In this document: in pieces, positions 22,658-49,552 of the stretch | Position numbering within the stretch: the stretch's first letter is position 1 | Layout of the letters: every line of letters starts with the position of its first letter | Origin: Basidiobolus meristosporus CBS 931.73 | Lineage: Eukaryota; Fungi; Basidiobolomycota | Direction: 5' to 3' | DNA length: 64,000 nt | Assembly: GCA_002104905.1 (NCBI GenBank) | Contig: MCFE01000042.1 | Span: forward strand, 138,104-202,103 | The notes under the pieces: model-generated | Seen by the model: the letters and a program-made list of their open reading frames with translations, nothing else | What the model was told of the DNA's origin: nothing | Database searches by the model: none | Program-made: the position numbers and the translations under genes

Positions 22658-23941
22658 ATGGCACCAAACATTTTTAGTCGTCTCAGAGGACTTGACGCAC
22701 CAACCGTCGTTGAGAAATCAAAGGTATTCTGCTGACCAGATTCTTTTGCCTGCCAAATTTTTCTGACCTTCGTACCAGGACGCCGTTCGAATCGGAATTT
22801 TAGGCGCTGCTAGGATTGCCCCTCAATCATTGATCAGTCCGGCCGCTGGACTGAGCCAGGTGCTGATTGCTGCAGTGGCTGCCAGAGATATCAAAAGAGC
22901 CGAGGTGGGTCAACAATGCTCCACTGATGTATTAAGCATCTGGTGACCATGTTGACATTTCAATTACTTTCAAAGGAATACGCAGTGAAGCACAGTATCC
23001 CTAAAGCATATGGTAGCTACGAAGAGCTGCTGAATGATACCGAAATTGAAGCCATCTACAACCCCCTTCCTAATGCTTTGCATTACGAATGGACCATTAA
23101 GGCACTTCAAGGTAAAGGGTGCTTGTTTGAGTACTCTCCGAAATCGGGCTAAAATCTTCGCACAGCGGGAAAGCATGTTTTCCTTGAGAAGCCAGCCGCA
23201 TCCAATGGAGAAGAGGCCCAGAGGATCTTGGAGGAATTGCAACAGCATCCGGAATTGGTGATACTAGAGAATTTCCACTATCAATTCCATCCAGCTCTCC
23301 TTCGTTTCCGGGAGTTGGTGAACGACGGAAGGTTGGGTCAGATCAAAAACGTCTCTGCCATCATTCGTTTACCAAATCTGTTCGGTTTGGACGATATACG
23401 CTTCAACTACGACCTTGCTGGAGGAATCAACATGGATTTGGGTTGTTACGCGGTTTCCGCCTTGCGGTTCATCACAAATACCGAGCCACTGCGCGTGCTC
23501 GAAGCAGAACCCACCATAGTGAAAGAAAATGTCGAGGGAGAAATGAAGGCGAAGTTGGAATTTCCAGAGGGTATTACCGGAGAGATTCATGTCTCCATGA
23601 TTGAATCTTGGCTTTCCTTCCGAAACTTTCTCCCATTGCTCACAGTCGAGGGAGAGCAGGGAGAGGCAAGTATATCTGCCTTCGTTCTTCCACACATGTT
23701 CCACACCATCACTTTGAAGAACAAGCGTACTGGTGAAACAGAGTATGAGAAAGTATATGAGGAAGGCCGTTCCTCTTATCAATATTCATTAAAGGCATTT
23801 GCTGACAAAGTGCGTGGAAAGGCTACCGATTACTGGTATCCTTTCGACAAGAGCGTTGGCAATGCGGTCAGCGTCGATAGGATTTATGAAGGCGCTAATA
23901 TGAAGTTGCGTGGAAAGCCGCTGAACCAATCAAATAATTAA
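22658..23941 (+). CDS. Gfo/Idh/MocA family NAD(P)-dependent oxidoreductase
   Basis: Spliced N-terminus AVRIGILGAARIAPQSLISPAAGLSQVLIAAVAARD, then IYNPLPNALHYEWTIKAL, GKHVFLEKP (after an intron), ENFHYQFHP, GGINMDLGCY. About three short introns. Confidence 0.88.
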
Positions 23942-24234: not shown

Positions 24235-25959
24235 TCAGTCATTTGATAGTATGATTCTATTCATATATGTTGCAATGATTGCATGCCCAGAGACTGAGTT
24301 CGCAGCAGCGAGGTAGTTGTCTGGACGGACCAAGAAGAAAACGGAATGAGAAGGCTTGTATTGCTCGACGAAATCACCACTGTCTTCGTACACCTCGAAT
24401 GGTGAGTCGGTCAGTCCATTGCTGGTTGGGCAAATGACGCTCACCTGAAGTGCGGTGAAGTCTGAGCGATTGTGTTTCTTGGCCAGGGCTAGGTACGGCT
24501 CAAAATCTAACATCCCGCTGTTCGATGCCCATATGAACAAGTGATAAGCACCCGGGTTCTTCTTGAAGATCTCAAATATTTTGATGAGCTGCCTCCCTCC
24601 TGGACTACGCTTGGAAAGAACGGCGTTCGGAACGCGTTGTCCATTCTTGATAGCTGTAATGGGTGTTTTGAAGTAGCCGACCTCCAGCGGTTTCTCAGTG
24701 AGAAGTCCTTGGGGGTAGGCGATCAGCAGCTGGGACATGTTGTCGAAGAAGGTTTTGTACACGATGGGTAGCTTGCTCAGAGGGGGAAATATCCAATCAC
24801 GTAAGAAGCTCAGCCATCCTGACTCCAGAGTGAAGAACTGACGGAGTGCCGATGTCCCTTTCAATACACCGCGAGCAACCGGTACACGTTCATCCACGTA
24901 GCTCTTGAGTAGAACATCCGGATTCCCGACCCCCTTAAGGATCAAGTTCAATTTCCACGCAATGTTGAAGGCATCTTGCATTCCAGTGTTCAACCCTTGA
25001 GCGCCCCATGGGCTGTGAATATGCGCTGCATCTCCGGCCAGAATCACTCTTCCAACAACAGTCTGGTCAACCATTCTCTCGTTGACATTATAGGTGCTAT
25101 GCCACAGAATCTCTTTCGCGTGGACGGTATAGGGGGTGGTTAACCTGTTGATCAGCTCCATCAAGGACGCTTTGGATAGCTCTTCCTGGCTTGTTTCGTG
25201 GTCCAGCTTGACAAACACCCGATGTACATTGATATCAATTTTGGCAATCGCCAGCATCGCGTCGGAATGCCAAAAGATGGTGGTTTCATCCCTGGACGGT
25301 AGGTCAGTGTCCATGATTATGTCACAGAGGCCCCATTTCGTCTCGATGGTAACTCCATCGAACTTCGCCCCAAGTTTCTTTCGAACGAAGCTATGGGCGC
25401 CGTCACAACCAAGAAGAAACTTGGATTCGAATTTTCTTATCTCACCCGAGGCGGATTTTAGTGTAGAAATGACCTTCTGATCATTGGATTGAACGAAATC
25501 AGTAAGCTCCCAACCGGTTTCTACCTGCTTGTGGTAAACATTTTCCAGCTCCTCCCTCAGGTATTGCTCGGTTTTCCATTGGGGAATGAACAGAAGGAAT
25601 GGATAGTCGGATCGTACCGAGCCAAGATACGGAAGGGTAGCGACCATGGTGCCTTTGGAAAAAAATCGAATGGCCTTGTTTAGCGTAGCCACGCCGTTTT
25701 CTTGGAATTTCTTTGCGAGATCCATCTGGTCCAGAATCTCCATCATGCGGGCCTGCAGGGAGATGGCTTTGGACAAACGAGCATCATACGCTACCTTATC
25801 AACCTGAAAGAAGGAGTTGGTTAGTAGGCTTGGGCGAATTAAGTGGCTAGACAGACTTACAATTCGGAATGGAACACCAAGGCGGGCAAGACTAAGGGCA
25901 GCAAACAGGCCAACGCTTCCGGCGCCAATAATTAGCACTTCAGTAGAGTTTTCAGACAT
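24235..25959 (-). CDS. FAD-dependent monooxygenase (FAD_binding_3, PheA/TfdB aromatic hydroxylase type)
   Basis: GAGSVG Rossmann motif, LGCDGAHSFVRK (DG motif), LAGDAAHIHSPWGAQGLNTGMQDAFNIAWKL (GD motif), C-terminal LVRPDNY thioredoxin-like tail. In-frame 57-nt intron 25804-25860. Confidence 0.92.
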   Translation of the reverse strand: MSENSTEVLIIGAGSVGLFAALSLARLGVPFRIVSLSSHLIRPSLLTNSFFQVDKVAYDARLSKAISLQARMMEILDQMDLAKKFQENGVATLNKAIRFFSKGTMVATLPYLGSVRSDYPFLLFIPQWKTEQYLREELENVYHKQVETGWELTDFVQSNDQKVISTLKSASGEIRKFESKFLLGCDGAHSFVRKKLGAKFDGVTIETKWGLCDIIMDTDLPSRDETTIFWHSDAMLAIAKIDINVHRVFVKLDHETSQEELSKASLMELINRLTTPYTVHAKEILWHSTYNVNERMVDQTVVGRVILAGDAAHIHSPWGAQGLNTGMQDAFNIAWKLNLILKGVGNPDVLLKSYVDERVPVARGVLKGTSALRQFFTLESGWLSFLRDWIFPPLSKLPIVYKTFFDNMSQLLIAYPQGLLTEKPLEVGYFKTPITAIKNGQRVPNAVLSKRSPGGRQLIKIFEIFKKNPGAYHLFIWASNSGMLDFEPYLALAKKHNRSDFTALQVSVICPTSNGLTDSPFEVYEDSGDFVEQYKPSHSVFFLVRPDNYLAAANSVSGHAIIATYMNRIILSND

Positions 25960-27934
25960 TTGAAAGATGATGACACTTGAGCTCCTGAGCGGGGATTTTA
26001 TTCGTAGCAAGTTTGCCCTTCGGAGTCATCTTTTCTCAAGGGATCATAAAGTTAGATGATTACACTAGGCTAAATGAAGTGCTTTTTCTGGATAATGACT
26101 CCATAAGGCTTGTGTATTACTAATAACTACAAATGCCTGTGTTCTATGTGTGTCTTCACTAATTGATTGTCTCAAATCCACCGGCCTTGATAAGCACATG
26201 GCAGTAAATGAGAAATATGCTGGCGAAGCTCATATGTGTAACCTGTTCAACAAGATGCTTCGCTATAGTTGGCTATTTCAGTTGGCAATTTGCTAATCAA
26301 AACAATCGCCCTACCAGCCTGTTGAGCAGCCCAAACAAGGAAAACAATCGTCTTGGCGCGAAATGAATGATCCACGCTAATGGAAAGGATCATCAGCTCT
26401 TGTGGTTCCATGGACTAACCTTTAGATAGTTTAATTGATGAAATACTATATGGGTTCGGGTAGCTAAATGTGAGCCAAATATTCTCGAAGATCACTGACA
26501 ATCCCGATCAGATTCCATCGTCAGATTCAAATCGTTCTTCATGGAGGATGCAACCACGTGCTAAATAGGGCTCAGCCGAAGTGTGCTGTGGATGATTAAT
26601 ACAGCTGATATGACTAACGGTACTTTACCCGGTAGAGGCAAGGAATGTGCGCCATATTGGTTTCGGAAAAGCTGATTCGTCGGGAAAACGTCAATAATGA
26701 GTTCAACCACAGCTGCCAAGAATTACTGGTTGGAAAATGACCAAAGTAAATCTCAGTTCCTTTAGCTCGAGGTGGGTAGCATTTTGCATCAACGAACTAA
26801 AGCCATCGCATTTTGCTTGATTGGTAATATGGAAATAGGGCGGTGGATGACACTACTTGATCGTTACTCTCCAGAACCATGGCAACAATTACGCGAGCAT
26901 TGCTAATAGTATTGTGCCAGTATGATCATATGGATTGTTCATTACTGGTGACCAATCCAATGACCTGGCTAATTGCTCTTGTAGCTATCTGGGATTGCAA
27001 AGTTGTCCGCTATCATGGATCAATGACATCAGTGGTACCATCAGATCCTGCATCAGCCAAAAAAAGTTGTTTCCAAAGTGTGGTTACACAGGACTGTTGC
27101 ACCCACATCCGAGGTTTAATCTCGGGTTAGATTACAGAGAAGATCAATGCCATATTGAGAATAGCTATGTCTGCCAGGTATTAAATTTGCGGATATTTGG
27201 GCTTGTATCTCGACGATGCCTTCCAATATTTCACCAAATAAAATATTGAAGAGCATGGGAGAGTAATCCTATAGGAGAGCTTTGCCCGGGAAAATATACC
27301 GTCTGTTGTGACGGTCCTGGTCTCTACCAAGTAGTGGCGTCGAGATGTCCTTGCGTGAGTAAGTTGCAATCATAGGTAACAGCTACATATGGTTGTTTCG
27401 CCCCAATCTGGCTCTTATGCGAGCCTTAACGTGTTAATGAGTTAATATAGGAATCCGGTGGATGATTGAACATAGTCTCAGCAGAGGTCCCTTGTCTGTA
27501 GCCAGTTATGCCTAGAAATACCTGGAATAATTATATTAGCTCTTCGGTTAAGTTCTGCGACTCTGTAGCACCAAGTAATCTTAGCTAGGGGAAGCAAAAT
27601 CCCTCTGGAGAATCTTGTCGAATCTATTCTAGAATAAGCATGGTCGCGGTAACTGATTTGTCAAATGGTAAGAGGATGGCTGGTAGCTGATGCACTTGCC
27701 TTTTCAGTTCATTCAAATCGCGGTGTTGACGATTCCTGAGGAGGACTACGGAATCCATTCAAGGACGCTCCACTCAAACCAAATCAAGACAAAGCGTGGG
27801 CACCACTAACACCATTCTCTCAAAAGTTGGCATATTACTTGTCAGGAGATTGCAGCATCATGTATATAAATAACGCTTCAGACAATGCTGCATGTCAGTA
27901 TACATCTTCAATTCCGCTCTACAAATATACAAGC

Positions 27935-30900
27935 ATGCCGTCTGTTAACACCGAGGCAAAACACTACCAGTTTACCGTTGAGGAGAAGCGCCTTTGGGTC
28001 AGATGGAAGGTGTACGGGGAGGCTGGCACTGGGAATACCCCTATTGTCCAATACATCAACGGAAAGCTCGATGTTGATAGGTTTCTCGATGCAATTGCAG
28101 CGGCAGTGGCCCAGTTCAATGCACTCCAACTTTACTGTGTGGAGGCCGAAGATGGAACTGGCGCTTTTGTCAAATGCTCTGAAGAGGAGCTTCTGAGCCG
28201 CTCGTTTGTTGGCTATCATGACTTTTCCCAGGATGAAAATCCTGAGGTTTCTGCTCGCGATTTTGCGTGTGGTTTTGTTGGCAAGGGCTTCAATATAGAG
28301 AAATTTCCCTTACACGAGCATGCGCTTATCAAGTATGACGATGACAAATACATGTATGCCACTCATTTTGCGCATATTATTATCGATGGAAGATCGTGGA
28401 GATTGTTTGCATCTCTACTATCAGCTATCTACCAGACGGATCCCGAGGCTGGTTTATCCTCGCAAGTTGGCTGTTTCAGCAAGTATGCAGATCGAGAGGA
28501 CTACCGCAGATTGACGGAGGGCTATAGAGATGCCAAAGCTCAACTTGACGAGAAATCCTCTGTTCATTGGGAAAAAACCCTGAAGGATGCCAAATTTTTA
28601 CTAGACTTTTCGAACAGACTGCCAACTAGAAGCAGTCATCAAGGGAGCGTAAACTCTGGGACACGTTTGCGACAAAAAATCCCTAGAAAACTCTCGGAGT
28701 CCATGGATAGTTTCGCTAGAGCTGAGAGTACTACCTTCTTCTGTATCTTTGCCACAGCAGTGAACGTTCTCCTCTATCGCTACTTTGGTCAAGACGACAT
28801 AACAATTGCGTATGCAGTAGATGCCAGACCGATAAAGCAGAGCCAATTCATGAGCTTATTGGATGGATTCTGTGTCAATGACATGCTTCTTCGAACCCAA
28901 ATCGATCCAGGATTAACCTTCCGGAAACTCTGCCAACAGGTATCTGCTCAGCGCTGGGAGGATCGTAGACATCAATACTATCCGCTCATAGATGAGATCA
29001 TGCCCCAGGTTCGAAAGCAATACCCAGACTTGGAAGGCAGCTTTTCCAACATCATGATCACGCAATCACCTCTTCACAGAAATGTCTTGCAGCTAGGCTC
29101 GGGGATTCGATGCGACCCCGATGAGAATGAAATCACCTACGAAGATACCAATTACGATCTGACATTCATTATTGATGAGCATGACTTTAAGTATGGTGCG
29201 GGAGCTGTCGAGTATACTTTGTTCTACCGAAACTCAAAAGTTTGACCCCGAGTTTTCTCGAAGGATGTCCGAGAACCTAATTACGCTGCTAGAAAGCGTC
29301 TTTGGGGAAAAGGGCGAGCTGGATACACCAATTAGCCATTCATCAATTCTATGCAAGAAGGAGATTCAGCTGCTCCAGTCTTGGAATAATACACATAAAG
29401 CAGAGTATGTTGACGGAAAGACTATTCTGGAGCCTATCCGTAGCCAAGTACGAAAGAACCCAACCGCGCTGGCTTTGATCAGCGATGAGGAGAATTTAAC
29501 TTACGGGGAGCTGTGGAACGGGGCAAATCAGCTGGCCAGACATCTAATAGACCTGATGGTTAAGCCCGAGACTCTTGTCTGTATGTTGATGAGCCGTTCA
29601 GTCCACGCGTTCGTCACCACTATTGGCATACTCAATTCAGGCGCAGCTTACCTGCCAGTCGACCCAGCCTACCCTATTGATCGAATTGAGTTCATGCTGG
29701 AAGAATCGGAGTCGAAATACATGGTGACCGAAAGAAAGTTATACGAGAGTAGCGACCGCCTTCGTTCTTTGATTGACAGCTTCCCGGGCGTGGTTGTATT
29801 CTATGACGATCCAGCCTGGCGAGATACCGTTTCTGAGCAAGAGCTGGAGCCCATTGCCAACCCGGACAACCTTGCCTATGTTATTTTTACTTCGGGGTCA
29901 ACCGGAAAGGTATGAACATATAATCCACCATCTCGAAAAACTTACTAAAATGATTCACCTAGCCCAAGGGTGTGATGATGGCCCACTCATCCCTACGAAA
30001 CTTGGCACGATGCTATGCGAATGCCTTTCAGATTGACGACACAGCGAGAGTGCTGCAGTTCAGTTCGATTTGCTTTGATGCAACTGTGGGCGACTGGGCC
30101 AGTGCTTTTAGCTCCGGTGGGGCATTGGTGGTTGTCAACTCGGCTGCCCATCTAGTTGGCTCTGGTTTCATGGATACAGTCTATCGTCACAAAGTGACAT
30201 ATTGCCTCATTCCCACCTCAATGCTGAACACCTTCCCAGAGGAAGAGGTGTATAAGCTAGCGAGCATGAGAGCCCTCTCGATCGGAGCTGAGCCTCCCAA
30301 CCTACAACTGATGACCCGTTGGAAAGATCACGGATTTATGCTGATGAATTCGTATGGCCCTACGGAGACTTGTGTGATTGCAAATACCACTCAATTTACT
30401 GGTGAGAAGCATTACGCTTGCATAGGAAAGCTACTGCCAAATTACCAAGCGTTTATGCTGGATAATAATCAGCAAGTGTTGCCAGCGGGAATCATTGGCG
30501 AAATGTGCATCGCCGGTGCCGGTCTTGCTCGAGGATTTATTAACCAGCCTGTTCTGACAGATCAACTCTACCCTACTGTTGATTTGGCAGGGTTTGGTCC
30601 GGTGAGAGTCTATCGCAGCGGAGATGTTGCTTTATTCCATGATGATGGCGAGGTTCAATTCATCGGACGGATTGATTTCCAGGTGAAAATCCGCGGATTC
30701 CGCATAGAGCTGGGAGAAATCGAGAACAACATCCGACAACAAAGCGCGGTTGATGTCAAGGATGCAGTAGTAATGGCACAGGACGACAAAATGGGGATCA
30801 AGCGATTGGTTGGCTACGTTGTACTCGAACCACACCAGAAGGAGCAGGAGCATAAAGCCCTAGCGTCCAAGATCCGTCAGGAGCTGAAGCGCCTGGTCCC

Positions 30901-33900
30901 ACCGCACATGGTTCCGAGTCACATTCTGATCATGCAGGAGTTTCCTGTCTCTCCTAACGGGAAAATCGAGCGCAAGTTATTCCCAAATCCGGTGGCAAAT
31001 ATCTCGGAGAACGACTTGAATGAAGCATGGTCGAATACTGCCTCCGAATCCAGTGATCAGAAGTCAAGTCTTCAGGCTAGGTTAGAGAAACTCTTCGCCC
31101 AACTACTTGATCTGGACCATATTGGCGTGAACGAAAACTTCTTTGACTTGGGCGCGAATTCCCTGCTTATTGTGAAGGCCCATTCTATCATCAAGAAGAT
31201 AGATAAATTTGCAAACTTCTCGCTAGTACACTTATTCAAGTATCCCTCCATTCATGCGCTAGCTCAACATCTCGAGGAGAATTCAACCAAGAAACCCCAA
31301 CCAGTCGAGCGTGACAGTAAGGATGAGATAAGCAATTTGGAAGCTGGCAACGAGGGGCAGTCCATACATTTGGATGAAATCGCTATTATTGGTATATCCT
31401 GCCGCGCTCCTGGTGCAGATAACCATGAACAGTTCTGGGAAAATCTTCGTAACGGTGAAGAGAGCATTTCGTTCTATACGAATGAGGAGCTTCTAGCAGC
31501 CGGTGTTTCCCCTGCGGAGTTGAGCAATCCAAACTATGTGAAAGCACTTGGCGCTATGAATCCAGAATCCATTCAAACTTTTGATGCTGACTTTTTCGGA
31601 ATGGCTCCACGGGAGGTATTGGTGACTGACCCCCAACAAAGAATCTTCTTGGAGTGCAGCTGGGAGGCATTGGAGAACGCTGGGTACAACTCGGCAGGCT
31701 ATACAGGGAAAGTCGGCGTTTACGCCGGTGTCGGTATAAACCACTATCTCCATAACTATATCTTGCCACAAGAAGATTTGGTGCAAGATATGGGTGCCTA
31801 TCCAGTCATGATAGGTAACTCTCCCGATTTTCTAGCTACTCGAGTTGCCTATAAACTTGCCCTTCGTGGTCCTGCTATCACCGTTCAAACAGCTTGTTCA
31901 ACCTCACTTGTTGCTGTTCATCAAGCCAAGAATGCCATACGCAACGGTGAATGTGACATGGCCCTGGCAGGTGGAGTTTCATTGGGATCATTGGAAAAAA
32001 GCGGTTATGTATATCGTGAGGGAATGGTTGCTTCGCCCGACGGACATTGTAGGGCCTTTGACCAAAACTCCAAAGGCACTGTTCTGGGACAAGGGTGCGG
32101 TGTCGTACTCCTAAAATCGTTAGCTAAAGCGATTGCAGATAAAGACAACATATATGCTGTACTGAAGGGCTCTGGAGTCAACAACGATGGTTCCCTCAAA
32201 GTTGGCTTCACTGCGCCTAGTGTTCAGATGCAGGCGAGTGCCATCACTAGCGCACACCAGGATGCTAAAGTTAGCCCTAAAGACATTTCTTACGTCGAAA
32301 CTCATGGTACCGGCACCATTGTTGGTGATGTTATCGAGCTGGAGGCCCTGAATGATGCTTTCACCAACAATCAAGTGGCACACCATGAGCGATATTGTGC
32401 GATCACGTCCGTCAAGACCAACATTGGTCATACCGATTCTGCTGCTGGTGTAATTGGTCTTATCAAGGTGTCACTGGCATTGTACAATGAGTACATACCT
32501 CCCCATCTCCATTTCAGGGAGCCGAATGCCCAAGTAGATTGGGCTAACAGCCCATTTTATGTGAATACAAAATTGACTCCTTGGAAGAGAACCGAGGGAG
32601 TGCCTCGTATTGCAGGAATTAGTTCATTCGGAATGGGAGGGACCAACGCTCATGCTATTCTGAGTGAATCACCAGTATCGATCAGCAAGGAAACGTCGGA
32701 TTCCAAACTCCCTTGGTATCTACTGAACATATCCGCCTTCAACGACTGGTCTTTGAAAGAAAATACCAAGAACCTTGTAAGTTGGGTTCGTTCTCAACAA
32801 GGAGTCAGGTGGGACTTGAAAGATATTGCTTGCACGTTGGCCATCCATCGGTCACAATTTCCGAAGAGACAGGCATTGCTAGTTCAAAATATCTCCGAAC
32901 TAACCAGCCTAGATGAAAGTGGTCTAAGCGATAGAATAGTTTCCACCCCGAGAAAGAATGGACTATCCACCACCAATTCATTGGCCAGCCTGAAGGAAGT
33001 CACCGAGAAAGACAAGCATACTGTCTTCCTGTTACCTGGACAAGGTTCACAATACATATCAATGGGCCGAGATTTGTATAAGCACTACAAAACGTTTGCT
33101 AGTGTTATCGACGAATGTCTGCAATATGCAAACGATTTTAATGAGAGCTTACATCTCTCAGATATATTTTTCAATGCAACCGACCCTGAGACGATACAGC
33201 TTCACGGAAATATGTCAGCCATTGATGTTCATCGTCGAGTATGCCCTGGCCAAAACCCTTGAATCTTGGGGGATACAGCCAGACAGCATGATTGGGCACA
33301 GCCTCGGCGAGTATGTAGCCGCGTGCTTATCGGGAGTCTTTACACTAGAAGATGCTCTTAAAGTAGTGATATTCCGTGGTGCATTAATGAACTCACTACA
33401 GTCGGATAGTGCTATGTTGAGTGTTCGTTCATCTGAGGTTGATTTAGAAGCCCATATCGAGAGAATTGGAAGAGAGCGGTTCGACTATGCGGTGAAAAAC
33501 TCCCAGGAGCATTGGGTGATAGCTGGTGAGGCAAAGGATATAGAGAACTTGCAGATTTCATTATCCACCGCTTCTATTTCTTGTCGACTATTGAAAACCA
33601 GCCATGGATTCCATTCCAGATTTATGAATCCTTTGCTGGATTCGTTCTCGCTGTTCTTATCTAGTATTCCTCTGAATGAACCGAAAGTCCCCTTTGTCTC
33701 CTGTGTCTCTGGCACATGGATTACTGGTGTGGACGCTACTAGGGTTAGCTACTGGGTTGAGCATCTTCGTAATCAATGTCGTTTCGGGGAGGCTGCACAG
33801 TTTTTACTCAAGAATCAACATTCAGAAACTGTGTTCATAGAGGTTGGCCCTGGAAGAGGCCTAAGTACATTGATCAAGGTAAACGCCATCCAATTGAATG

Positions 33901-35438
33901 TCAGCCATGTTACAACGCCGGAGGTCACAACTATCACCACAATGCCTGCACCGTCTACTGCACCAGTTGCTGCCAAAAAAGCGGAAGACTCTGAGACCTT
34001 TGCAGTGGTCAAGGCCCTGGCTCAGCTCTGGAGTGAAGGCCTTCAAGTGAGATGGGATGTATACTACTCGTTGAAGGAATCGCCATCGCAAAAGGTTCCG
34101 CTTCCTTCCTATGCATTTGATCGCAAACGTCATATGCTGAAGAAAGCCAGAGCCTCTTTCACCTCTGTTGCAACAGTCGATATCAAGGCCAATCAAGAAA
34201 GACCTAGTATCCCTATTCCTGAGGATTCCATTCTTGAACAGATCACGCCCACTGAAGAGATGATTCAGAAAGTCTGGCAAAGCTTCTTGTATTTGGATTC
34301 CCCACCATCGGTCGAATCTGATTACTTTGAGCTTGGAGGGGACTCCATGATGGCAGTTCAGCTTGTTGGGAAAATATCTGAGCTTTTTCCTGGAGTGGAT
34401 CTAGGAATACATGCCTTATTGAGGAATCCCACCATCAAGGGATTAGCAAAGGTCATTGACTCAATGACCATCTCAAATGCCAGCAATGGGGATGATACAG
34501 CAGCCGAGTCAAATGTAAACGACTCCACCTCGACACTTCGGACCATTAATCTCTCAAGCTCGAACGATGAGATATTGGTTCAATTGAAGAACGGCCTTGG
34601 AAATCCCGTGTTCTTGGTTCATCCAGTGGGGGGAGACATCTTTGGCTTCCGCTCCCTGATCAATCAGCTTGCAAGTAACATTACTGTCTATGCCTTCCGG
34701 GCACCCTTCTTTACGGAGTCTCGCAAATCTCCTTATGCAGACGTCAAGGAAATGGCTGCGGCTTATGTGCAGCTTTTGCTATCAAAGTTGGACGCAAACT
34801 CTCGACAAAATATCCATTTGGGAGGTCACTCAATGGGCGGCGTAGTTGTGTATGAGATGGTTCAGCAATTGAATTCTTTGGGCTGCAATGTCAGCAGAAT
34901 CATACTATTAGATCCTCCGCTTAATCCTGTCTCTTCGAGTGTTTTAGCAAGATCCTACTTTATGCCTGTGCTTGAGGACCCAGTCGATATAGCGGAGTAT
35001 ATATTCGGCCATCGAGTTAACCTTCCACCGGATGATAGAGCAGAGCTGGCTCACCTGCCGCTCACGGTTGCTATCTCAAAAGTATGCTCATTACTCTCCC
35101 GTGATATAGAGACGCTCGGCTTGAAGAAGTTGAGCGGATTGTCACCGGATGTTGTACTTTCTATTGGACGCACATGGGCCCATCATTACCTCATCATGCG
35201 AGACTATCAACCTGAACCGATTCCGTTTAGAGAAAAGAATCGAGAGAATATTGTTCTGTATATCAAGAATTCTGAGGCAGACGGGTATTTCCCAACCTAC
35301 GCCCATGTTGCATATCAAGATGCCATGCTCAGCGGTGGCTTCGATTTTAGACTTGTTCAGGTCCCTGGGAGTCATCAAACAATGCTGCTGGATCCAAATG
35401 TCCAGTACATTGCTGCCGCTATCGTCCAATTTCTATGA
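27935..35438 (+). CDS. Hybrid NRPS-PKS, domain order C-A-T-KS-AT-T(ACP)-TE; two +1 frameshifts as assembled (~29230, ~33200)
   Basis: C: FAHIIIDG. A: YVIFTSGSTGK|PKG (intron 29910-29962), FDAT, NSYGPTE, YRSGD, GRIDFQVKIRGFRIELGEIE, NGK. T: FFDLGANSL. KS: DPQQRIFLE, TACSTSLV, HGTGT, KTNIGH. AT: PGQGSQY, GHSLGE, HGFHS. ACP: YFELGGDSM. TE: GHSMGG, LLD, GSH. Confidence 0.93.
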
Positions 35439-38827: not shown

Positions 38828-41245
38828 ATGATCTACAAGGAACTCCCTAAATTCGCTGCCGATGATGAGATCATCTTCGACAAAATTGATGAGCAAACTC
38901 CAGACAACTGGATCCAGAGACATCCTAACATGATCAGACTTACTGGCAAGCATCCTTTCAACGCCGAGCCTCCTCTGACCGAACTTTACAATGACGGTTA
39001 CATCACTTCGAATGCTAAGTTCTACGTGCGCAGTCACGGATTTGTTCCCAGACTTGAATGGGACACCCATACTGTGGAGGTTTGTGGCCTGGTCGACAGA
39101 CCCAGGGTCTTCACTATGGATGAATTGGCTGCCTTCCCCAAGAGACAGTTCCCTGTGACCTTCCCTTGTGCTGGCAACCGTCGTAGAGAAGTCAACATGA
39201 TTAAGCAATCTAAGGGTTTCAGTTGGGGATCCGGTGGCGTCTCTACCTCCATCTTCGGTGGTCTCATGCTAAGAGATTTGTTGCTGGCTTGTGGAGTCCA
39301 AGTTCCTACCGAGGAAGAGGATGACTGGCACGTTCACTTCGAGGGTGTTGAGATGCTTCCAAATGGTATCTACGCTACCAGTATCGCCTACTCCTATGCC
39401 ATGAATGAAGCCAATGAGGTGCTTATGGCTTATGAAATGAACGGGGTCCCCCTGCCTCCCGATCACGGTTACCCCATTAGACTTCTTGTCCCCGGAACTA
39501 TTGGTGGACGTATGGTTAAGTGGGTCAACAAGATCTTTGTCTCCAAGGTCGAATCCGACAACTGGTACCACATCTATGACAACCGTGTTGTTCCCTCCCA
39601 TCTCTCTCCTGAGGAGTCAGTTGCCGGTAACTGGTGGCAGAAGATCAACTACATCATCAACCCCATCAACATCAACTCCTCCTTTGTCTATCCCGAGCAC
39701 GATGAAGTTGTTCCTCTATCCCAACGCACTTACAACTGCCGTGGATACGCCTACACTGGTAACGGCAGCATGATCACCCGTGTTGAGCTCTCACTCGACG
39801 ACGGTGAATCTTGGATTTTGTGTAACATCGACCAACAGGTTCCCTCTCCCATCAGTAAGAAGTACTGGGCCTGGGCGTTGTGGTCTTACGATCTTCCATT
39901 AGGCAAGCTGATCAGATGCAAGGAGATCATCGTACGTGCTTGGGATTCAACTCTGAACACTCAACCAGTAAATATCACCTGGAACGTGCTTGGCCAAATG
40001 AACAACGCCTACTTCAGACTGAGGGTTGATGCCGTAGAAGATGCTAACGGCCAGGTGTCGTTCAAGTTTGTACACCCTGCTCCTACTGAGACCACCGGCT
40101 GGATGGCTGAGAAGTATGGAAGAACCCAGACCAAGGCCGTGGATGATGGCAAGCCCAAGAGCGGAAAGACATTCACTCAAGCTGAAGTCGCTAAGCACAG
40201 AAGCCAAGATGACTGCTGGATCATCGTGAAGAAGAGAGTCTATGATATCACCAAGTTCGTAACCGAGCATCCTGGCGGTGTTGCCAGTATCATCCTCAAT
40301 GCTGGTATCGACTGCACTTCTGACTTCGAGGCTGTTCACTCCTCTACCGCCCATGATATCTTGGAGAAATACTACTTGGGCGATATTGAGGGTGAATTGA
40401 ACAACGAGATCTCGGCCCTGCCTCAAGACGAAGCCGGCGAACTGGTGGCATTGTCGAACCAGTACCGCTCATTCCCATTGATTGCCAGAAGAGACTTAAG
40501 CCATGATACTCGCTTGTTCCGCTTCGAGCTACCAAGCCCTGAATACCGCTTAGGCCTGCCTGTAGGAAAGCACGTCTACCTCAAAGCAAACATCAATGGA
40601 AAGGACGTGATCCGTGCCTATACTCCATACTCATTGGACGAAGAATTGGGTTACGTTGACCTCATTGTCAAGGTGTACTACAAGAACGTCCATCCTAAAT
40701 TCCCCGAAGGCGGCTTGATGACTCAGTATCTTGACTCGCTTCAAATCGGTGAAACTGTGGGAATGAAGGGACCCGTTGGCCACTTCAAGTATGAGGGTCT
40801 TGGTAACTACGACGTTGATTTCAGTAAGTCTAGAAGACACGCTCACATCATCGGTATGATTGCTGGCGGCAGCGGAATCACTCCCATGCTTCAAGTGATC
40901 AAGTCAGTGCTCAACAACCCATTGGACTTCACTAGACTTCATCTGCTGTATGCCAATCGTACCCCAGAGGATATTCTACTCCGTGAGGAACTTGACCAGC
41001 TTGCTGAAAAGCACTCTGAACAGCTCAAGGTGTGGTATACCGTCGATGGAGAGGCCCCCATTGACTGGGAGTATTCCGTTGGCTATGTTGACTACGAGAT
41101 GTGCAAGGCGCATCTACCATCTGCCAGCAACGACAAGCGTAAAGCCATCATGTTGTTGTGTGGCCCAACTCCAATGATCCAGTATGCTTGCTTACCCGCT
41201 CTTGAGAAGATGGGCTATGATCCAGAGGCGGTTATTACTTTCTAA
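38828..41245 (+). CDS. niaD: Assimilatory nitrate reductase (Moco - dimerisation - cytochrome b5 - FAD/NAD(P)H)
   Basis: RLTGKHPFNAEP, Moco cysteine in CAGNRR, DHGYPIRL, GGRMVKW, b5 HPGG and FEAVHS, FAD RAYTP, AGGSGITPM, CGPTPM. No intron within the ORF; the start codon is uncertain (first ATG 38828, frame open from 38723). Confidence 0.96.
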   Translation: MIYKELPKFAADDEIIFDKIDEQTPDNWIQRHPNMIRLTGKHPFNAEPPLTELYNDGYITSNAKFYVRSHGFVPRLEWDTHTVEVCGLVDRPRVFTMDELAAFPKRQFPVTFPCAGNRRREVNMIKQSKGFSWGSGGVSTSIFGGLMLRDLLLACGVQVPTEEEDDWHVHFEGVEMLPNGIYATSIAYSYAMNEANEVLMAYEMNGVPLPPDHGYPIRLLVPGTIGGRMVKWVNKIFVSKVESDNWYHIYDNRVVPSHLSPEESVAGNWWQKINYIINPININSSFVYPEHDEVVPLSQRTYNCRGYAYTGNGSMITRVELSLDDGESWILCNIDQQVPSPISKKYWAWALWSYDLPLGKLIRCKEIIVRAWDSTLNTQPVNITWNVLGQMNNAYFRLRVDAVEDANGQVSFKFVHPAPTETTGWMAEKYGRTQTKAVDDGKPKSGKTFTQAEVAKHRSQDDCWIIVKKRVYDITKFVTEHPGGVASIILNAGIDCTSDFEAVHSSTAHDILEKYYLGDIEGELNNEISALPQDEAGELVALSNQYRSFPLIARRDLSHDTRLFRFELPSPEYRLGLPVGKHVYLKANINGKDVIRAYTPYSLDEELGYVDLIVKVYYKNVHPKFPEGGLMTQYLDSLQIGETVGMKGPVGHFKYEGLGNYDVDFSKSRRHAHIIGMIAGGSGITPMLQVIKSVLNNPLDFTRLHLLYANRTPEDILLREELDQLAEKHSEQLKVWYTVDGEAPIDWEYSVGYVDYEMCKAHLPSASNDKRKAIMLLCGPTPMIQYACLPALEKMGYDPEAVITF

Positions 41246-43882: not shown

Positions 43883-44340
43883 GGGGGGGGGGAGACAGTC
43901 ATCAACAGGTGAAATCTTTACTTCAGTTAAAATAGAGAATCAAGAGCTACTGTTGTAGCTTTGATGCAAGAGTGTGTAGCTGTGGTGAATTGTTAGATAA
44001 GTTAACAAGTAGAAATGATAGCTCATCAGTGCTCAAGACACTGTTCAGTGAGAAGGGGGGTAGCAAGAGGGGTAAGAATGATTAGTCAACAACATTAATA
44101 AGGGAACATGATACAGAATGATACACATCATAAAGGGAGTGTGCTGCTTCAGATATTGCTGCCAAAGGTCTGTCAAGTATCTCAAGTAGGCCAGCTTGGG
44201 CTCTTCTGACTGCATAATATAATTGTTGTAAGAGTCTTGGAGATACTGGAAGTGATTGGGAGGACAAGTAGATTATGTGGTTTTCACTTAATGATTTATT
44301 GAATGTAAAAGTGGTATTTATACTTTTACCTGGTCTTGGC
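43883..44340 (-). mobile_element. Old, diverged 3' fragment of the non-LTR retrotransposon (copy A)
   Basis: Begins G10-agacagtcatcaacaggtgaaatc like the other copies, and aligns by eye, with many substitutions, to the last ~450 nt of copy B. Confidence 0.85.
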
Positions 44341-44566
44341 ATTACAAACACGTAGAATAGGTTACGGAAGGTCCCAAGAACATGTGTGCAAAGTTTGGGG
44401 CTGTTTGGACAACTTTGAGAGTTTTCATGTTCTGGGCACCTGGTATTTTGGTGAAAATATTCTAAGTAAATCCCAACAATGAATTTGGTCAGTATTCTCT
44501 AGAATTTGAAGGTGATGATCTAAGTGACTAAGTTAGGTGAATATTTGGGTTGAATTACAAATTTTA

Positions 44567-44598
44567 GGGGGGGGGGGAGACAGTCACCAACAGGTGAA
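44567..44598 (-). mobile_element. 21-nt mini-copy of the retrotransposon 3' terminus with its own G11 tract
   Basis: G11-agacagtcaccaacaggtgaa lies immediately before gggttaG9-acagtcaccaacaggtgaaatc (the end of copy B). Confidence 0.8.
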
Positions 44599-44665
44599 GG
44601 GTTAGGGGGGGGGACAGTCACCAACAGGTGAAATCTTTATTTCAGTTGAAACAAAGAAGCCAGCA

Positions 44666-47433
44666 CTACTGTTGTAGCTTTGATACAAGAGTGTGTAGCT
44701 GAGGGGAATTTGTAGGTAAGTTAATAAGAAGTGATGATAGTTCTTCAGTGCTCAAGACACTGTTCAGTGGGAAGGGGGCTAGCAAGAGAGGTAAGAATGA
44801 CTTGTGAACAACATTAATGAGGGGAATGTGATAAGGATTGATGTTCATCATAAAGGGAGTGTGCTGCTGCAGATATTGCTGCCAAAGGTCTGTCAAGTAC
44901 TTCAGGTAGGCCAGCTTGGGTTTTTCTGACTGCAGAATATAGTGTGCAAACTTCTTGACTTCAGGATCTCCAAGTATAGTTCTCCAGCAGGAGCCAGGTG
45001 TTGTGTGGTGTGTTCTCTTCCAGGCCTTAATCAGTGGGTTGTTGCAGTGGTGAAGTCTGAGATATAATCTGGTTCTAAGGTAGAGAAGTCTGATCTTATA
45101 GGGCATAAACCCAAAAGCACCAAGAATAGCATGTCTGTAGGGGCATTCAGGCAAATGAGTCACCAAGGAGGTAATGCACCATACTGCAAACTTGTCAAGC
45201 TTAGTGCAGTCTCTAGAAGTAAGAGAGAGAAGTGGTAAGCCAAATTCCAGGACAGGGAAGACAAACTGCTTGAGTAGAAGGAGGCAGCTGGGAGCTGAAG
45301 TTGTAGGAGGAGTAACAGCTAGTAGCTTGTGGAGTGCCTGTCTTGCCAGGATAATTCTCTTCTTCAGGTGTGCTCCAGAGTCTAGTCCAGTAGGAAGGAA
45401 AGGAAAGCCAAGATATGTAGCAGAAACCTGAGCAGGTAGAGTGGAGTTCTCCAGGTTGATGGGAGAGCCCAAAGGTACTGTCTTTGCAATGGAAAGCTGG
45501 AGATTATTCTTCTGCAGATACTGGTGGATGGTCTGGGAGTCTTGTTGCACATTGGAGGAGGATATTCTGATGTCATCAGCAAAGAGAGTAACCAGGCTGT
45601 CAGCTGAGAGTCTTGGGAAATCACTCAGGAAGATGGCAAACAGTATAGGACCAAGCACAGAGCCTTGAACCACTCCATTAGGAACTGAGAACACAGCTGA
45701 TTGCTCACTTGGGTGCAGAATTCTTGCTTGTGGATCCAGAAACAGAGACCTGATAAAGAGGGTGAGAGAGGTACTGGAGAAGCATTGCAACTTGGACCAA
45801 AGCAGATTTCTGTCAACTGAATCAAAGGCCTTAGTTATATCAAACAGAACAGAGGGATACTTGCACTGGAGAGAGTGATCTTGGCTAAGTATGACTGCAT
45901 ATTCCAAGGAGAGGCCAGGAACAAAGCCAAACTGTGCAGGATGAAACTTGAGGGAGTCAGAGTAGAGCTCCTGAGCAAGCAGAAGCTCAAACACCTTTCT
46001 GCAGGTGGGCAGCAGAGATATTGGCCTGTAGGAGCTAGGATCCAGGTGCTTTCCTTTACCCTTGTACAGTGGCAGAACATTTGCAAAGGACCATTCCTCA
46101 GGAGTAGAAAGCTGGGCTGAGCATTGCTGAAACAGTGGAAGCAGAAGTGCAGACATGGCCTTGGTACTAGTCTTCAGAAGCTCATAGGAGATTGTGTCCA
46201 CACCTGGAGCAGTAGAGTTGGGAAGCCTCTTGAGCACATTATGGATTCTCCTTTGATCAAGTGCAAGTGGGATGGGCAGAGTCTTGAAGTCAGGATGAAA
46301 GCCAGGAGTTGAGTACTGCTTTGTAGAGAAGAAGATGTTAGCCAGCTGTTCTGTTGAAGGTAACTTCCTGGAAGAGGGCCTCATTGCCCTGTAGAGTCTT
46401 GATACTGTCTTGTTATAGAGTTGGAAGATTGCAGAGGCAAGGAACTCATAATATGATCCCAGAGCTGAGTATGCAGAGTGTGGTGAATTGCCTTGGAGTG
46501 GTGTATTGCTGTCAGGAGGAGTTTCTCTGTTTTTGGGTTAGGGAAACTCAGGTAGCTTTGTTGCAGGGCTGAAACAATGGATTCCCATTTTCTTGAGGTA
46601 ACAGCAGTAGTCTTGCATGGCAGTGAGAGGGAGGCAGACACCAGAATCAGATGCTTCACAAAGAGCCAGGCATAGTTGAGATCATCTGGCAGAGAAAGTA
46701 GCAAACTGGCAAGCTTCAAGTAGTTCCCAAAGTCTTTCTTCTGATTCTTGGTAGCTTTGTGGGTGAGCACAGTAAGTTTTGGCAGCTTCTTCTTCACAAC
46801 TGGTTGCATAGAAAGGGACCAGGCTGGGTGGTCAGAGGCTCTGAAGGATCCTAGCTCAGCTCCAGAGAATTGCTTAACTTCATTCACAAAGTAGAGGGCA
46901 GCAGCAGAAGGGCAGATCCAGTCAACACATCTTTTCTCAGATTGAGCACCTAGTGCTAGCAGATGACTTTCTCTCAGGAAGTTCAGTAGGACTGTAGACC
47001 TTGGCTTCATTCTTGCAGTCAGAGTAGTCTTGTTCTCCGGATGGGGAATGTTGTGATCTCCAAGCAAGATAATAGGTGTTGATATAGATTGCTGGTATTG
47101 CTGAACATTCTGGCATATAACTTGCACTTCCTGAAGGGAGAGACTTGGAGGCAGATAGCAGAGCACCAGACTGATAGTTGGCAACTGGAGAGCAGCACAG
47201 TAAGGGGAGTAAAGAGGAACACAGAGCTGAGGAGTATTGATGGTAGAAGAGATGAAGCAGATAGAGGAGGTATTCTTTGTTCTAGGAGTAGAAAAGCAAT
47301 ATAGATTAGTCAAAAGTATAGAGGGTAGCTGGACATCAATCAAACACAGGAGGGAAAATCTTGAAAGAAGTCTCTCTAGAGTTGGTCTTGATGGCTGTAT
47401 GCTGTTGCAGTTAAGCAACAGAACTTCAGGTAG
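44666..47433 (-). CDS. LINE ORF2, APE endonuclease + reverse transcriptase (copy B; -1 frameshift at ~46385)
   Basis: APE: LLNCNS, CYLPP, GDHN, VDWI, SDH. RT: APGVDTISY, YRPISLLPTCRKVFE, QFGF, FDITKAFDSV, GVVQGSVLGPILF, FADD, YLG. Copy D reads through the position where B lacks one T. Confidence 0.92.
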
Positions 47434-48943: not shown

Positions 48944-49201
48944 ATCCAGAGTTTCAGCTTCAAATTTCAATTTTTGAGATTTTTGGGTGATTTTTGATGG
49001 GTGGGATCAAAATTAGGGTTAGGGTTGCGCGCTGTGACTGCTTTTTATGATCGCAAGGTCAGAACCTAGGAAAAAATAAAAATAGTTAGTAAAGGTGATT
49101 TAATGGATGGATGGATGGATTCGGAGTCAGATTCAATCAAAAAATCAAATCGTTGACTAATTTAAAGAGGGTAGGGTGTAGGGTTAGGGTTAGGGTGTAG
49201 G

Positions 49202-49505: not shown

Positions 49506-49552
49506 TTAGGGTTAGGGTGTAGGTGTTATAGTAAGGGCTAGAAAAAGGTTAG

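What the first reader, a model, noticed from the sequence alone, without database searches (positions are those of the whole stretch)
27935..35438. Single-polypeptide NRPS-first hybrid C-A-T-KS-AT-T-TE with bacterial-style KS: candidate N-acyl tetramic acid or related assembly line
Seen: full catalytic motifs for all seven domains, no KR/DH/ER/MT, only one intron, and an N-terminal C domain (AHIIIDG, catalytic His kept). Manual alignment to GrsA gives an A-domain code of about D-A-G-L-S-G-S-V-I-K: Asp235 is kept, so an alpha-amino acid is expected, but I do not recognise the code. The AT has the malonyl-type HGFH. Established: typical fungal hybrids are PKS-first with R/DKC release. NRPS-first fungal cases (TAS1 C-A-T-KS; SwnK; HispS) have other layouts. 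Starter-C/A/T plus KS/ACP/TE lines make N-acyl tetramic acids (reutericyclin, mutanocyclin) in bacteria. Inference: N-acylated amino acid + one malonate, released by TE cyclisation; possibly horizontally acquired.
Basis: partly seen in the sequence, partly recalled or inferred. Interest (0 to 1): 0.78.

Follow-up and report, generated by a model that had tools for sequence, protein, structure and literature searches.

The report
Bacterial-type NRPS-PKS gene in Basidiobolus
The frog-gut fungus Basidiobolus meristosporus carries a real seven-domain enzyme gene of bacterial ancestry that should join one amino acid to one malonate unit; the gene was catalogued in 2020, its product is unknown, and its two apparent breaks are absent from two other Basidiobolus genomes.

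Summary
Window 27935-35438 (+) encodes one C-A-T-KS-AT-T-TE protein of about 2,480 residues. All catalytic motifs are present and there is one 53-nt intron. The window is B. meristosporus CBS 931.73 (GenBank MCFE01000042.1), next to a chromosome tip.

In this PacBio assembly the frame breaks twice by a one-base length difference, near 29236 and 33201. The deposited annotation therefore splits the gene into a 1,205-aa "acetyl-CoA synthetase-like" model and a 468-aa "hydrolase" model, and misses the C domain. Contigs of two other Basidiobolus genomes (99.5% and 85% identical) read through both places. Their substitutions fall mostly on third codon positions, so the gene is functional in the genus.

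Every domain's best relatives are bacterial (KS 55-58% identity, the rest 23-42%). Tabima et al. 2020 probably already list the gene as a horizontally acquired "NRPS-like" model (146993) and its B9252 orthologue as an NRPS-PKS hybrid.

A bacterial single-protein twin of the layout exists (L015). The proven CorA pyrazinone synthetase has the same layout plus one extra A-T module. The C domain is an outlier that leans towards the acyl-accepting starter type.

The reading "N-acyl amino acid plus one malonate" is therefore plausible. Tetramate release versus hydrolysis and decarboxylation remains open. I class it as a new member of a known kind.

The parts
27935..35438 (+). Whole NRPS-PKS gene, from the ATG to the stop. 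It has one intron and two one-base frame breaks in this assembly, and would encode about 2,480 residues if read through.
   Evidence: ORFs, Pfam, translation. The GenBank models cover only 29460-33128 (ORY03808.1, P0001) and 33942-35438 (P0270).
27959..29340 (+). Condensation domain at the very N-terminus. The active-site motif AHIIIDG lies at 28370-28390. There is no docking domain or loading module before it.
   Evidence: Pfam PF00668 at 6.6e-33 and the motif. tblastn with bacterial loading modules finds nothing upstream. The domain is divergent: 23.5% mean identity to bacterial counterparts. Its best NCBIfam stretch is the PvdL-like C1 region.
29236..29240 (+). First frame break (frame 2 to frame 0), in a short A run at the end of the C domain.
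   Evidence: ORF overlap and sequence. Contigs of runs X1, X2 and X4 differ here by one base in length and stay in frame. The canonical C-terminal C-domain motif continues in the other frame.
29439..30964 (+). Adenylation domain of bacterial type, with specificity code D-A-G-L-S-G-S-V-I-K. It is interrupted by the intron.
   Evidence: Pfam PF00501 and PF13193. PDB best hits are LgrA, TycA and GrsA (1e-97 to 1e-49), against fungal SidN at 7e-22 and PsoA at 1e-29.
29910..29962 (+). The only intron, 53 nt, inside core motif A3.
   Evidence: Sequence. The deposited model splices here. Indels of the 85%-identical relative cluster in it.
31079..31273 (+). First carrier domain (T, LGANS).
   Evidence: Pfam PF00550 and the motif.
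31373..32905 (+). Ketosynthase with Cys-His-His (Cys codon at 31895-31897), plus the KS-AT linker.
   Evidence: Pfam PF00109, PF02801, PF16197 and PF22621. PDB best hits are bacterial modular and NRPS-fed KS domains (1e-184 to 1e-100), against fungal PsoA at 1e-63.
33023..33851 (+). Acyltransferase, malonyl-type (GHSLGE, HGFH). It is interrupted by the second frame break.
   Evidence: Pfam PF00698 in two pieces, motifs, and about 40% identity to bacterial KS-AT-ACP-TE proteins.
33201..33202 (+). Second frame break (frame 2 to frame 0), inside the AT domain.
   Evidence: Runs X1, X2 and X4 all differ by one base in length here and stay in frame. The conserved AT motif continues in the other frame.
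34263..34454 (+). Second carrier domain (ACP, LGGDS).
   Evidence: Pfam PF00550 and the motif.
34605..35438 (+). Thioesterase of the alpha/beta-hydrolase type (Ser codon at 34830-34832, GHSMGG), followed by the stop codon.
   Evidence: Pfam PF00975. PDB hits are NRPS and PKS TE domains. It is 26-30% identical to the TE of bacterial KS-AT-ACP-TE proteins.

Best explanation
This is a gene of bacterial ancestry that has long been resident in Basidiobolus. It encodes a self-contained two-module assembly line.

Proposed mechanism, step by step:
1. The A domain loads one alpha-amino acid of unknown identity onto T1.
2. The N-terminal C domain, which looks like a divergent acyl-accepting (starter-type) C, acylates the amino group with an acyl-CoA or acyl-ACP from primary metabolism.
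3. The AT loads malonate onto the ACP.
4. The Cys-His-His KS extends the N-acyl-aminoacyl chain by two carbons, giving an N-acyl-4-amino-3-oxoacyl thioester.
5. The TE releases it in one of two ways. It may form a lactam, giving an N-acyl tetramic acid (reutericyclin logic). Or it may hydrolyse the thioester to a beta-keto acid that loses CO2, giving an N-acyl aminomethyl ketone (CorA logic).

Shown here: the domain set, the motifs, bacterial affinity, the intron, intactness in other isolates, and purifying selection.

Inferred: the acyl donor, the amino acid and the release chemistry.

The two frame breaks in this window are most likely consensus errors of the PacBio assembly (about 70%) rather than real mutations of strain CBS 931.73.
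For: - Domains and motifs.
- Identity of the DNA: 100% match to ORY03808.1 of B. meristosporus CBS 931.73 on MCFE01000042.1.
- Fungal setting: a eukaryote-type nitrate reductase, an MFS transporter and aspartyl proteases lie beside the gene.
- Bacterial affinity of each part. A-T-KS is at most 42% identical to cyanobacterial and acidobacterial hybrids, and there are no other fungal hits. AT-T-TE is 33% identical to about 1,285-aa KS-AT-ACP-TE proteins, mostly cyanobacterial. KS is 55-58% identical to them. In the tree the KS sits in a starred clade of NRPS-fed terminal modules. PDB contrasts between bacterial and fungal hits agree.
- Intact elsewhere: contigs of X1 and X2 (99.5% identity, depth about 200) and of X4 (85% identity, one 15-kb contig) read through both break places.
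- Selection: 25 of the 30 listed X4 differences and 13 of the 16 X1/X2 differences fall on third codon positions (my count by frame).
- An autonomous line is feasible: L015 in a Pseudomonadota MAG is one 2,387-aa C-A-T-KS-AT-T-TE protein among housekeeping genes.
- C-domain subtype: its best stretch in PRK05691 is profile 674-1011 (C1, which follows the acyl ligase-T). Four bacterial control C domains all map to 1724-2174. Identity to those C domains is 23.5%, where 43.6 +/- 4.8% is expected at the same KS distance.
- Published precedents for each release mode: PMC8210680 for reutericyclin and PMC10979478 for CorA.
- Error-prone assembly: PacBio origin, and a third one-base frame break in one of two near-identical tandem protease genes.
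Against: - No product, no RNA run and no assay is available. The run search found no RNA holder.
- By single-sequence PDB scores the C domain is still nearer to an LCL domain (TycC6, 62.7 bits) than to starter C domains (RzmA 40.5, SrfA-A 39.7, PvdL C1 29.8).
- The C-domain tree was uninformative (branch length 2.28, long-branch warning).
- The first His of HHxxxDG is Ala.
- The rest of the protein resembles terminal modules of lines whose upstream donor is an aminoacyl or peptidyl carrier.
- I could not match the A code to a known substrate.
- No run of strain CBS 931.73 itself covers the two break places. X3 matches the window exactly but misses them.
Confidence: 0.55

Rival explanations
1. 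Cor-like line missing its first module. The C domain is an ordinary peptide-bond-forming C. It takes an aminoacyl group from a separate A-T ('NRPS-like') protein encoded elsewhere. The enzyme then makes a dipeptidyl beta-keto acid that decarboxylates and cyclises to a 5-methylpyrazinone, as CorA does.
For: - CorA is A-T-C-A-T-KS-AT-ACP-TE, with a proven mechanism.
- The Microcoleus two-gene systems (L007, L008) have the same domain set, and their first domain is an amino-acid-type A, 35-40% identical to ours.
- Our A, KS, AT and TE find their best or near-best matches in such systems.
- Basidiobolus has many NRPS-like genes.
Against: - No A-T gene and no remnant lies upstream in the window.
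- Only about 8 residues precede the C domain, so there is no docking domain like the TubC_N of P0151 and P0153.
- The C domain differs in subtype from the C domains of these lines.
Confidence: 0.15
2. The C domain is a vestige. The enzyme works as A-T-KS-AT-T-TE on a free amino acid and releases an N-unsubstituted 5-alkyl tetramic acid, or a gamma-amino-beta-keto acid.
For: - The C domain is by far the most eroded domain. It scores 114 bits on Pfam, against 331 bits for the L015 C domain.
- It is 23.5% identical to counterparts.
- A word-based search of 238-758-aa proteins found no relative.
- The first His of the motif is lost.
Against: - The catalytic His, Asp and Gly are kept, and motifs C5 and C6 are recognisable.
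- In the last 240 nt of the domain, 17 of 21 differences from the 85% relative are at third codon positions, so the domain is under constraint.
Confidence: 0.15
3. In strain CBS 931.73 the gene is a true pseudogene, inactivated by two real single-base changes, and nothing is made in this strain.
For: - Two independent breaks lie in 7.5 kb, while the neighbouring nitrate reductase, transporter and monooxygenase ORFs are unbroken.
- The second break is not in a long homopolymer.
- The location is subtelomeric.
Against: - The assembly is PacBio-only.
- Both breaks are one-base length differences relative to two other genomes.
- Differences from the 99.5% isolate are still mainly synonymous.
- Another conserved gene in the window shows the same kind of break.
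- An earlier agent reached the same verdict for another NRPS of this genome (a lead only).
Confidence: 0.28

Closest known systems
CorA, coralinone (5-methylpyrazinone) synthetase of Corallococcus exiguus (PMC10979478)
   Same: It is a bacterial single-gene NRPS/PKS that ends in C-A-T-KS-AT-ACP-TE. It performs one malonyl extension of an aminoacyl thioester and has no reductive domains. Its terminal TE releases a beta-keto acid. Modules of this kind are the nearest relatives of our KS, AT and TE.
   Different: CorA has an extra A-T module in front and builds a dipeptide. Our protein starts with the C domain, and that C domain is of a different subtype. CorA itself was not aligned here because its sequence was not in hand.
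Reutericyclin / mutanocyclin lines (RtcN C-A-T plus RtcK KS-T-TE; MucD/E) (PMC8210680)
   Same: The logic is the same: a starter C puts a fatty acyl group on one amino acid, one malonate is added, and the TE cyclises to an N-acyl tetramic acid.
   Different: These lines are split over two proteins, have no in-line AT, and come with PhlABC-like acetylases and a deacylase. No such genes were seen near our gene. Sequence relatedness was not tested, because no Rtc or Muc sequence was in hand.
Uncharacterised bacterial C-A-T-KS-AT-T-TE protein of a Pseudomonadota MAG (L015, JAZKIX010000070.1, 2,387 aa)
   Same: It has the identical seven-domain order in one polypeptide. It stands alone among housekeeping genes, so it is presumably autonomous.
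   Different: It is only 50% (KS), 35% (A), 36% (AT), 26% (TE) and 22% (C) identical to ours. Its C domain is a canonical LCL-like domain. Its product is unknown.
   Same: It is a fungal, NRPS-first enzyme with an N-terminal C domain that N-acylates the loaded amino acid, and its product is a tetramic acid.
   Different: TAS1 has no AT, second carrier or TE, and its KS acts as the releasing cyclase. Our KS keeps the full condensing triad and is of the bacterial modular type. No TAS1 sequence was compared here.
Basidiobolus gene models 146993 (CBS 931.73) and N161_14278 (B9252) in Tabima et al. 2020 (PMC7466969)
   Same: These are very probably this gene and its orthologue. Model 146993 is a single-module 'NRPS-like' gene with horizontal-transfer evidence and a cyanobacterial best hit. 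N161_14278 is the only NRPS-PKS hybrid reported in Zoopagomycota. Their A domains cluster together.
   Different: The paper did not recognise the full seven-domain gene in CBS 931.73, did not flag the B9252 hybrid as transferred (0/1), and proposed no product beyond a loose surfactin analogy. I could not verify that model 146993 equals ORY03808.1.

Membership tests
Bacterial-type modular NRPS-PKS hybrid (type I, cis-AT) | Collinear C, A, T, KS, AT, ACP and TE domains with intact catalytic motifs. | tested here: met
   Pfam and motifs.
Bacterial-type modular NRPS-PKS hybrid (type I, cis-AT) | The domains are closer to bacterial modular enzymes than to fungal iterative PKS or fungal NRPS. | tested here: met
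   KS scores 1e-184 to 1e-100 against bacterial chains and 1e-63 against fungal PsoA. The A domain scores 1e-97 against bacterial chains and 7e-22 to 1e-29 against fungal ones. All named hits are bacterial.
Horizontally acquired gene fixed in a fungal genome | The gene lies in fungal chromosomal context, carries a spliceosomal intron and has normal read depth, so it is not contamination. | tested here: met
   Intron. Eukaryote-type nitrate reductase and other fungal genes on the same contig. An orthologue at 85% identity in another Basidiobolus. A coverage z-score of -0.2 is reported for model 146993.
Horizontally acquired gene fixed in a fungal genome | A phylogeny nests the gene inside a specific bacterial donor clade, with other fungi absent. 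| tested here: inconclusive
   The KS sits inside a starred bacterial clade but on a long branch with no resolved sister. No fungal sequences were in the tree. Proteins of 2,100-4,000 aa were never sampled because of tool length limits.
cor-like 5-alkylpyrazinone synthetases | Two amino-acid modules (A-T-C-A-T) come before KS-AT-ACP-TE. | tested here: not met
   Only one A domain is present, the protein starts with C, and there is no A-T upstream.
cor-like 5-alkylpyrazinone synthetases | A terminal KS-AT-ACP-TE module without reductive domains, related in sequence. | tested here: met
   Corallococcus and Myxococcus loci are among the relatives.
Reutericyclin-type N-acyl tetramate lines | A starter (acyl-accepting) C domain at the N-terminus. 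| tested here: inconclusive
   The position is N-terminal. The subtype differs from LCL controls and prefers the PvdL C1 region. However, single-sequence PDB scores and the tree do not settle it.
Reutericyclin-type N-acyl tetramate lines | A TE that cyclises to the tetramic acid, plus PhlABC-like acetylases in the cluster. | tested here: not met
   No thiolase, HMG-CoA-synthase or DUF35-type ORF was found among ORFs of at least 120 aa between 10 and 44 kb. TE chemistry is not testable with these tools.
Fungal TAS1-type NRPS-PKS | A C-A-T-KS layout that ends at a cyclising KS, of fungal lineage. | tested here: not met
   AT, a second T and a TE follow the KS, and the KS is of the bacterial modular type.
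Fungal PKS-NRPS hybrids | PKS first (KS-AT-DH-MT-KR-ACP), then C-A-T with R or DKC release. | tested here: not met
   The order is reversed, there are no reductive or MT domains, and release is by a TE.

The most novel reading that the evidence does not exclude
A gut-dwelling early-diverging fungus has domesticated a bacterial terminal NRPS-PKS bimodule and fitted it with a strongly remodelled, acyl-accepting C domain. The result is a one-protein factory for N-acyl tetramic acids, which are reutericyclin-like membrane-active antibiotics. The fungus uses them against gut bacteria. This would be the first such line in a eukaryote, and an example of domain-level reinvention after transfer.
Probability: 0.25. 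Interest if true: 0.6.

Novelty: new member of a known kind. Interest (0 to 1): 0.4.

Why it matters
Basidiobolus is the one zygomycete lineage rich in bacterial-type secondary-metabolite genes, and almost none of their products are known. This gene is small enough to express whole. It is intact in at least two other isolates, and it should give a simple, predictable scaffold: one amino acid, one malonate and possibly an acyl cap. That makes it a tractable entry point for asking what transferred bacterial assembly lines do in a fungal gut symbiont. On the practical side, the deposited annotation is wrong here: three fragments, one of them unannotated, and a spurious intron. The published count of zero NRPS-PKS hybrids for CBS 931.73 probably reflects one-base assembly errors.

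Tried and rejected
- The exhaustive representative search with the 1,096-aa piece was ranked by summed score. Its top 150 were therefore giant multimodular bacterial PKS proteins and said little about orthologues.
- Word-based searches are limited to 0.55-1.75 times the query length. Full-length relatives of 2,100-4,000 aa (CorA-sized, or twins of this gene) were never sampled.
- A single-protein scan of bacterial genomes found nothing. Only the alignment-based scan worked.
- A search with the C domain alone gave no hit.
- The C-domain tree, labelled by what precedes each C, was uninformative. Our branch had length 2.28 and joined another long branch.
- A careful KS subtree gave no supported sister.
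- I first read the Microcoleus NRPS (L007) as FAAL-ACP-C-A-T. tblastn showed its first domain is an amino-acid-type A domain, so I dropped that reading.
- NCBIfam gave no equivalog for any domain.
- The atlas look-up of the neighbouring FAD monooxygenase gave a eukaryotic nearest cluster, so co-transfer of a cluster is not supported.
- A supplement look-up for expression of model 146993 found no files held.
- A literature search for Basidiobolus tetramates or pyrazinones found nothing.


Full report
**What is there**

Four overlapping or adjacent + strand ORFs cover the finding: 27827-29245, 29172-29915, 29972-33262 and 33096-35438. Pfam places on them, in order, Condensation, AMP-binding (two halves) with AMP-binding_C, PP-binding, ketoacyl-synt N and C with the KS-AT linker families, Acyl_transf_1 (two halves), PP-binding and Thioesterase. 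No KR, DH, ER or MT appears.

- C: AHIIIDG.
- A3: TSGSTGK|PKGV.
- T1: LGANS.
- KS: TACSTS, ETHGTGT, NIGHT.
- AT: GQGSQ, GHSLGE, HGFH.
- T2: LGGDS.
- TE: GHSMGG, LLD, GSH.

The PDB search aligns the A domain to GrsA (1AMU) with query residue 1 at residue 197. I do not recognise the code, and no specificity predictor was available.

**Breaks in the frame**

One break is an intron, 29910-29962 (53 nt, GTATGA...TACTAA...TAG), which splits core A3. The deposited gene model splices exactly there.

The other two breaks, near 29236-29240 and at 33201-33202, have no intron signals. On both sides of each, canonical domain sequence continues in the neighbouring frame.

The deposited T-TE model also removes 30 residues from the TE. 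Those residues align with conserved TE sequence of relatives, so that 'intron' is spurious. The gene therefore has one intron. Read through, it would give about 2,480 residues.

**Whose DNA it is**

The 1,096-aa piece is 100% identical to ORY03808.1, 'acetyl-CoA synthetase-like protein, partial', of Basidiobolus meristosporus CBS 931.73, on contig MCFE01000042.1. That annotation has a 1,205-aa A-T-KS model and a 468-aa T-TE model, and nothing over the C domain.

The neighbours are as follows:
- A divergently oriented FAD_binding_3 monooxygenase (24235-25959, minus strand).
- A GFO/IDH/MocA oxidoreductase (22658-23941).
- An MFS transporter.
- Two tandem aspartyl proteases.
- A eukaryote-type nitrate reductase (38828-41245).

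Earlier notes of this scan place telomere-directed LINE arrays from 43.9 kb on. The setting is thus subtelomeric and fungal, not a contaminating bacterial contig.

**Are the two breaks real?**

I laid contigs of four public runs on 29000-33400.
- Runs X1 and X2 come from one sample, are about 99.5% identical to the window, and have word depth of about 200.
- Run X4 is a different organism label, about 85% identical, and covers the stretch with one 15-kb contig.
- All three differ from the window by one base in length at each break place, and so stay in one frame.
- X4's other indels lie in the intron, apart from one compensating pair.
- Run X3 matches the window without any difference but does not cover the two places.

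I counted the listed substitutions by reading frame. Of the X4 differences, 25 of 30 fall on third codon positions (17 of 21 within the end of the C domain). Of the X1/X2 differences, 13 of 16 do. The gene is therefore under purifying selection in the genus and is intact in at least two other genomes.

The CBS 931.73 assembly is PacBio-based. One of the two near-identical tandem protease genes in this window shows the same kind of one-base break. Another agent judged breaks in a different NRPS of this genome to be assembly errors (a lead only). I put assembly error at about 70% and a real strain-specific pseudogene at about 28%.

**Relatives**

No protein above 50% identity exists among the representatives, apart from the gene's own fragment. 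The findings for each part were these:
- A-T-KS piece: the best hits (at most 42% over the full length) are bacterial C-A-T-KS-AT proteins from a cyanobacterial MAG, Acidobacteriota and others, and Flavobacterium A-T-KS-AT proteins.
- Context of the top three hits: they sit inside long multimodular bacterial lines.
- AT-T-TE half: its best matches (33%, full coverage) are stand-alone KS-AT-ACP-TE proteins of about 1,285 aa, mostly cyanobacterial.
- KS: 55-58% identical to those proteins.
- PDB contrasts: bacterial hits are far stronger than fungal ones for both KS and A.
- FastTree KS tree of 308 rows: the KS lies in a starred 73-row clade made mainly of such NRPS-fed terminal modules.
- IQ-TREE subtree: the KS has a long branch (0.9) and no supported sister, so no donor lineage can be named.

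**What is already published**

Tabima et al. 2020 report the following:
- One NRPS-PKS hybrid in all Zoopagomycota, N161_14278 of B. meristosporus B9252.
- Its A domain clusters with that of a 'single module NRPS-like' model, 146993, of CBS 931.73.
- Table 3 lists 146993 as horizontally acquired, with a cyanobacterial best hit and normal coverage.

That description fits this gene, although I could not verify the identifier mapping. The existence, hybrid nature and bacterial origin are thus essentially published. The full seven-domain reading for CBS 931.73 and any product proposal are not.

**Known systems with this logic**

CorA of Corallococcus is A-T-C-A-T-KS-AT-ACP-TE. It was shown in vitro and in vivo to release a dipeptidyl beta-keto acid, which decarboxylates and cyclises to 5-methylpyrazinones.

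Microcoleus loci L007 and L008 carry the same domain set as two genes plus an O-methyltransferase. Their first domain is an amino-acid-type A domain, not a fatty-acyl ligase.

I scanned one genome per bacterial species with an AT-T-TE alignment. This gave 80 loci in which ...A-T-KS-AT-T-TE ends lines with one, two or more NRPS modules.

One of them, L015 from a Pseudomonadota MAG, is a single 2,387-aa C-A-T-KS-AT-T-TE protein flanked by lipoate, DsbA and Hsp20 genes. The exact layout therefore exists in bacteria and appears to work alone.

Reutericyclin and mutanocyclin lines (C-A-T plus KS-T-TE) are the published precedent for N-acylation followed by tetramate release.

**The C domain is the odd part**

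Its identity to the C domains of 19 bacterial C-A-T-KS-AT bimodules averages 23.5% (maximum 25.6%). Bacterial pairs at the same KS distance (50-60%) have C identities of 43.6 +/- 4.8% (minimum 30.6%).

In NCBIfam PRK05691 (PvdL-like), its best stretch is profile 674-1011. That is the first C, which follows the acyl ligase and carrier and accepts a fatty acyl donor. Four control C domains (L008, L009, L015, L041) all map to the second, peptide-forming C at 1724-2174, with 306-387 bits.

Relative to the canonical L015 C domain, ours keeps proportionally more score against starter C structures (RzmA, SrfA-A, CDA) than against LCL structures. In absolute terms TycC6 is still its best PDB hit.

A tree of 125 C domains was uninformative, and a word search with the C domain alone found nothing.

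No loading module or its remnant lies upstream. No docking domain precedes the C domain.

I read this as a divergent, still constrained, probably acyl-accepting C domain, with modest confidence.

**Mechanism**

Shown:
- A complete single NRPS module and a single non-reducing PKS module with a TE.
- A condensing KS.
- A malonyl-type AT. Relatives have HAFH and CorA uses malonyl-CoA.

Inferred:
- N-acylation by the C domain with an acyl-CoA or acyl-ACP donor.
- One malonate extension.
- TE release, either as an N-acyl tetramic acid or as a beta-keto acid that decarboxylates.

The rivals are a cor-like line needing a separate A-T partner, a vestigial C domain, and a dead gene in this strain. The adjacent FAD monooxygenase has a eukaryotic nearest cluster in the atlas. 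Nothing ties it or the oxidoreductase to the pathway.

I never joined them into one protein for a search, a fold or a printout. This is also why proteins of 2,100-4,000 aa, the size class of true full-length twins, were not sampled by the protein searches.

**Verdict**

This is an uncharacterised, horizontally acquired member of a known class of bacterial NRPS-PKS lines. It is already catalogued, misannotated in this assembly, and probably intact in reality.

Noticed in passing
window 10295-11570 and 13200-14414 (minus strand): Two tandem, nearly identical aspartyl protease genes, each followed by the same repeated downstream sequence. The first copy changes frame by one base near 10415-10430 (after ...PNIDII), while the second reads through (...[18 protein letters not shown]). 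This is either a pseudogenised duplicate or another one-base assembly error.
   Followed up: partly
window 33942-35438 (GenBank model P0270): The deposited T-TE gene model removes a 90-nt in-frame 'intron' from the TE lid region. The removed residues align with conserved TE sequence of bacterial relatives, so the model is probably wrong.
   Followed up: yes
L007 4261-9741 and L008 2296-8217 (Microcoleus): The second A domain of these cyanobacterial A-T-C-A-T proteins carries a PilZ-domain insertion (PF07238, residues 1699-1783 in L008). A c-di-GMP-binding domain inside an adenylation domain is unusual. The genes sit next to GAF/histidine-kinase genes and an O-methyltransferase.
   Followed up: no
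L015 4880-12043 (Pseudomonadota MAG JAZKIX010000070.1): A stand-alone bacterial C-A-T-KS-AT-T-TE gene (2,387 aa) lies between lipoate-synthesis, DsbA and Hsp20 genes, with no other biosynthetic gene within the 15 kb held. It is an orphan single-gene line of unknown product.
   Followed up: partly
window 10395-14414 versus 27935-35438: CorA-type clusters in myxobacteria are reported to carry a co-clustered secreted peptidase (CorB) as a resistance gene. Here two secreted-looking aspartyl proteases lie 14-17 kb from the hybrid gene. This is probably coincidence, since the protease family differs, and it was not examined.
   Followed up: no
window 44000-50000 and 52000-64000: GC skew is strongly positive (0.1-0.28) over the distal 20 kb. 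This matches the LINE and chromosome-tip elements that other notes of this scan describe.
   Followed up: no
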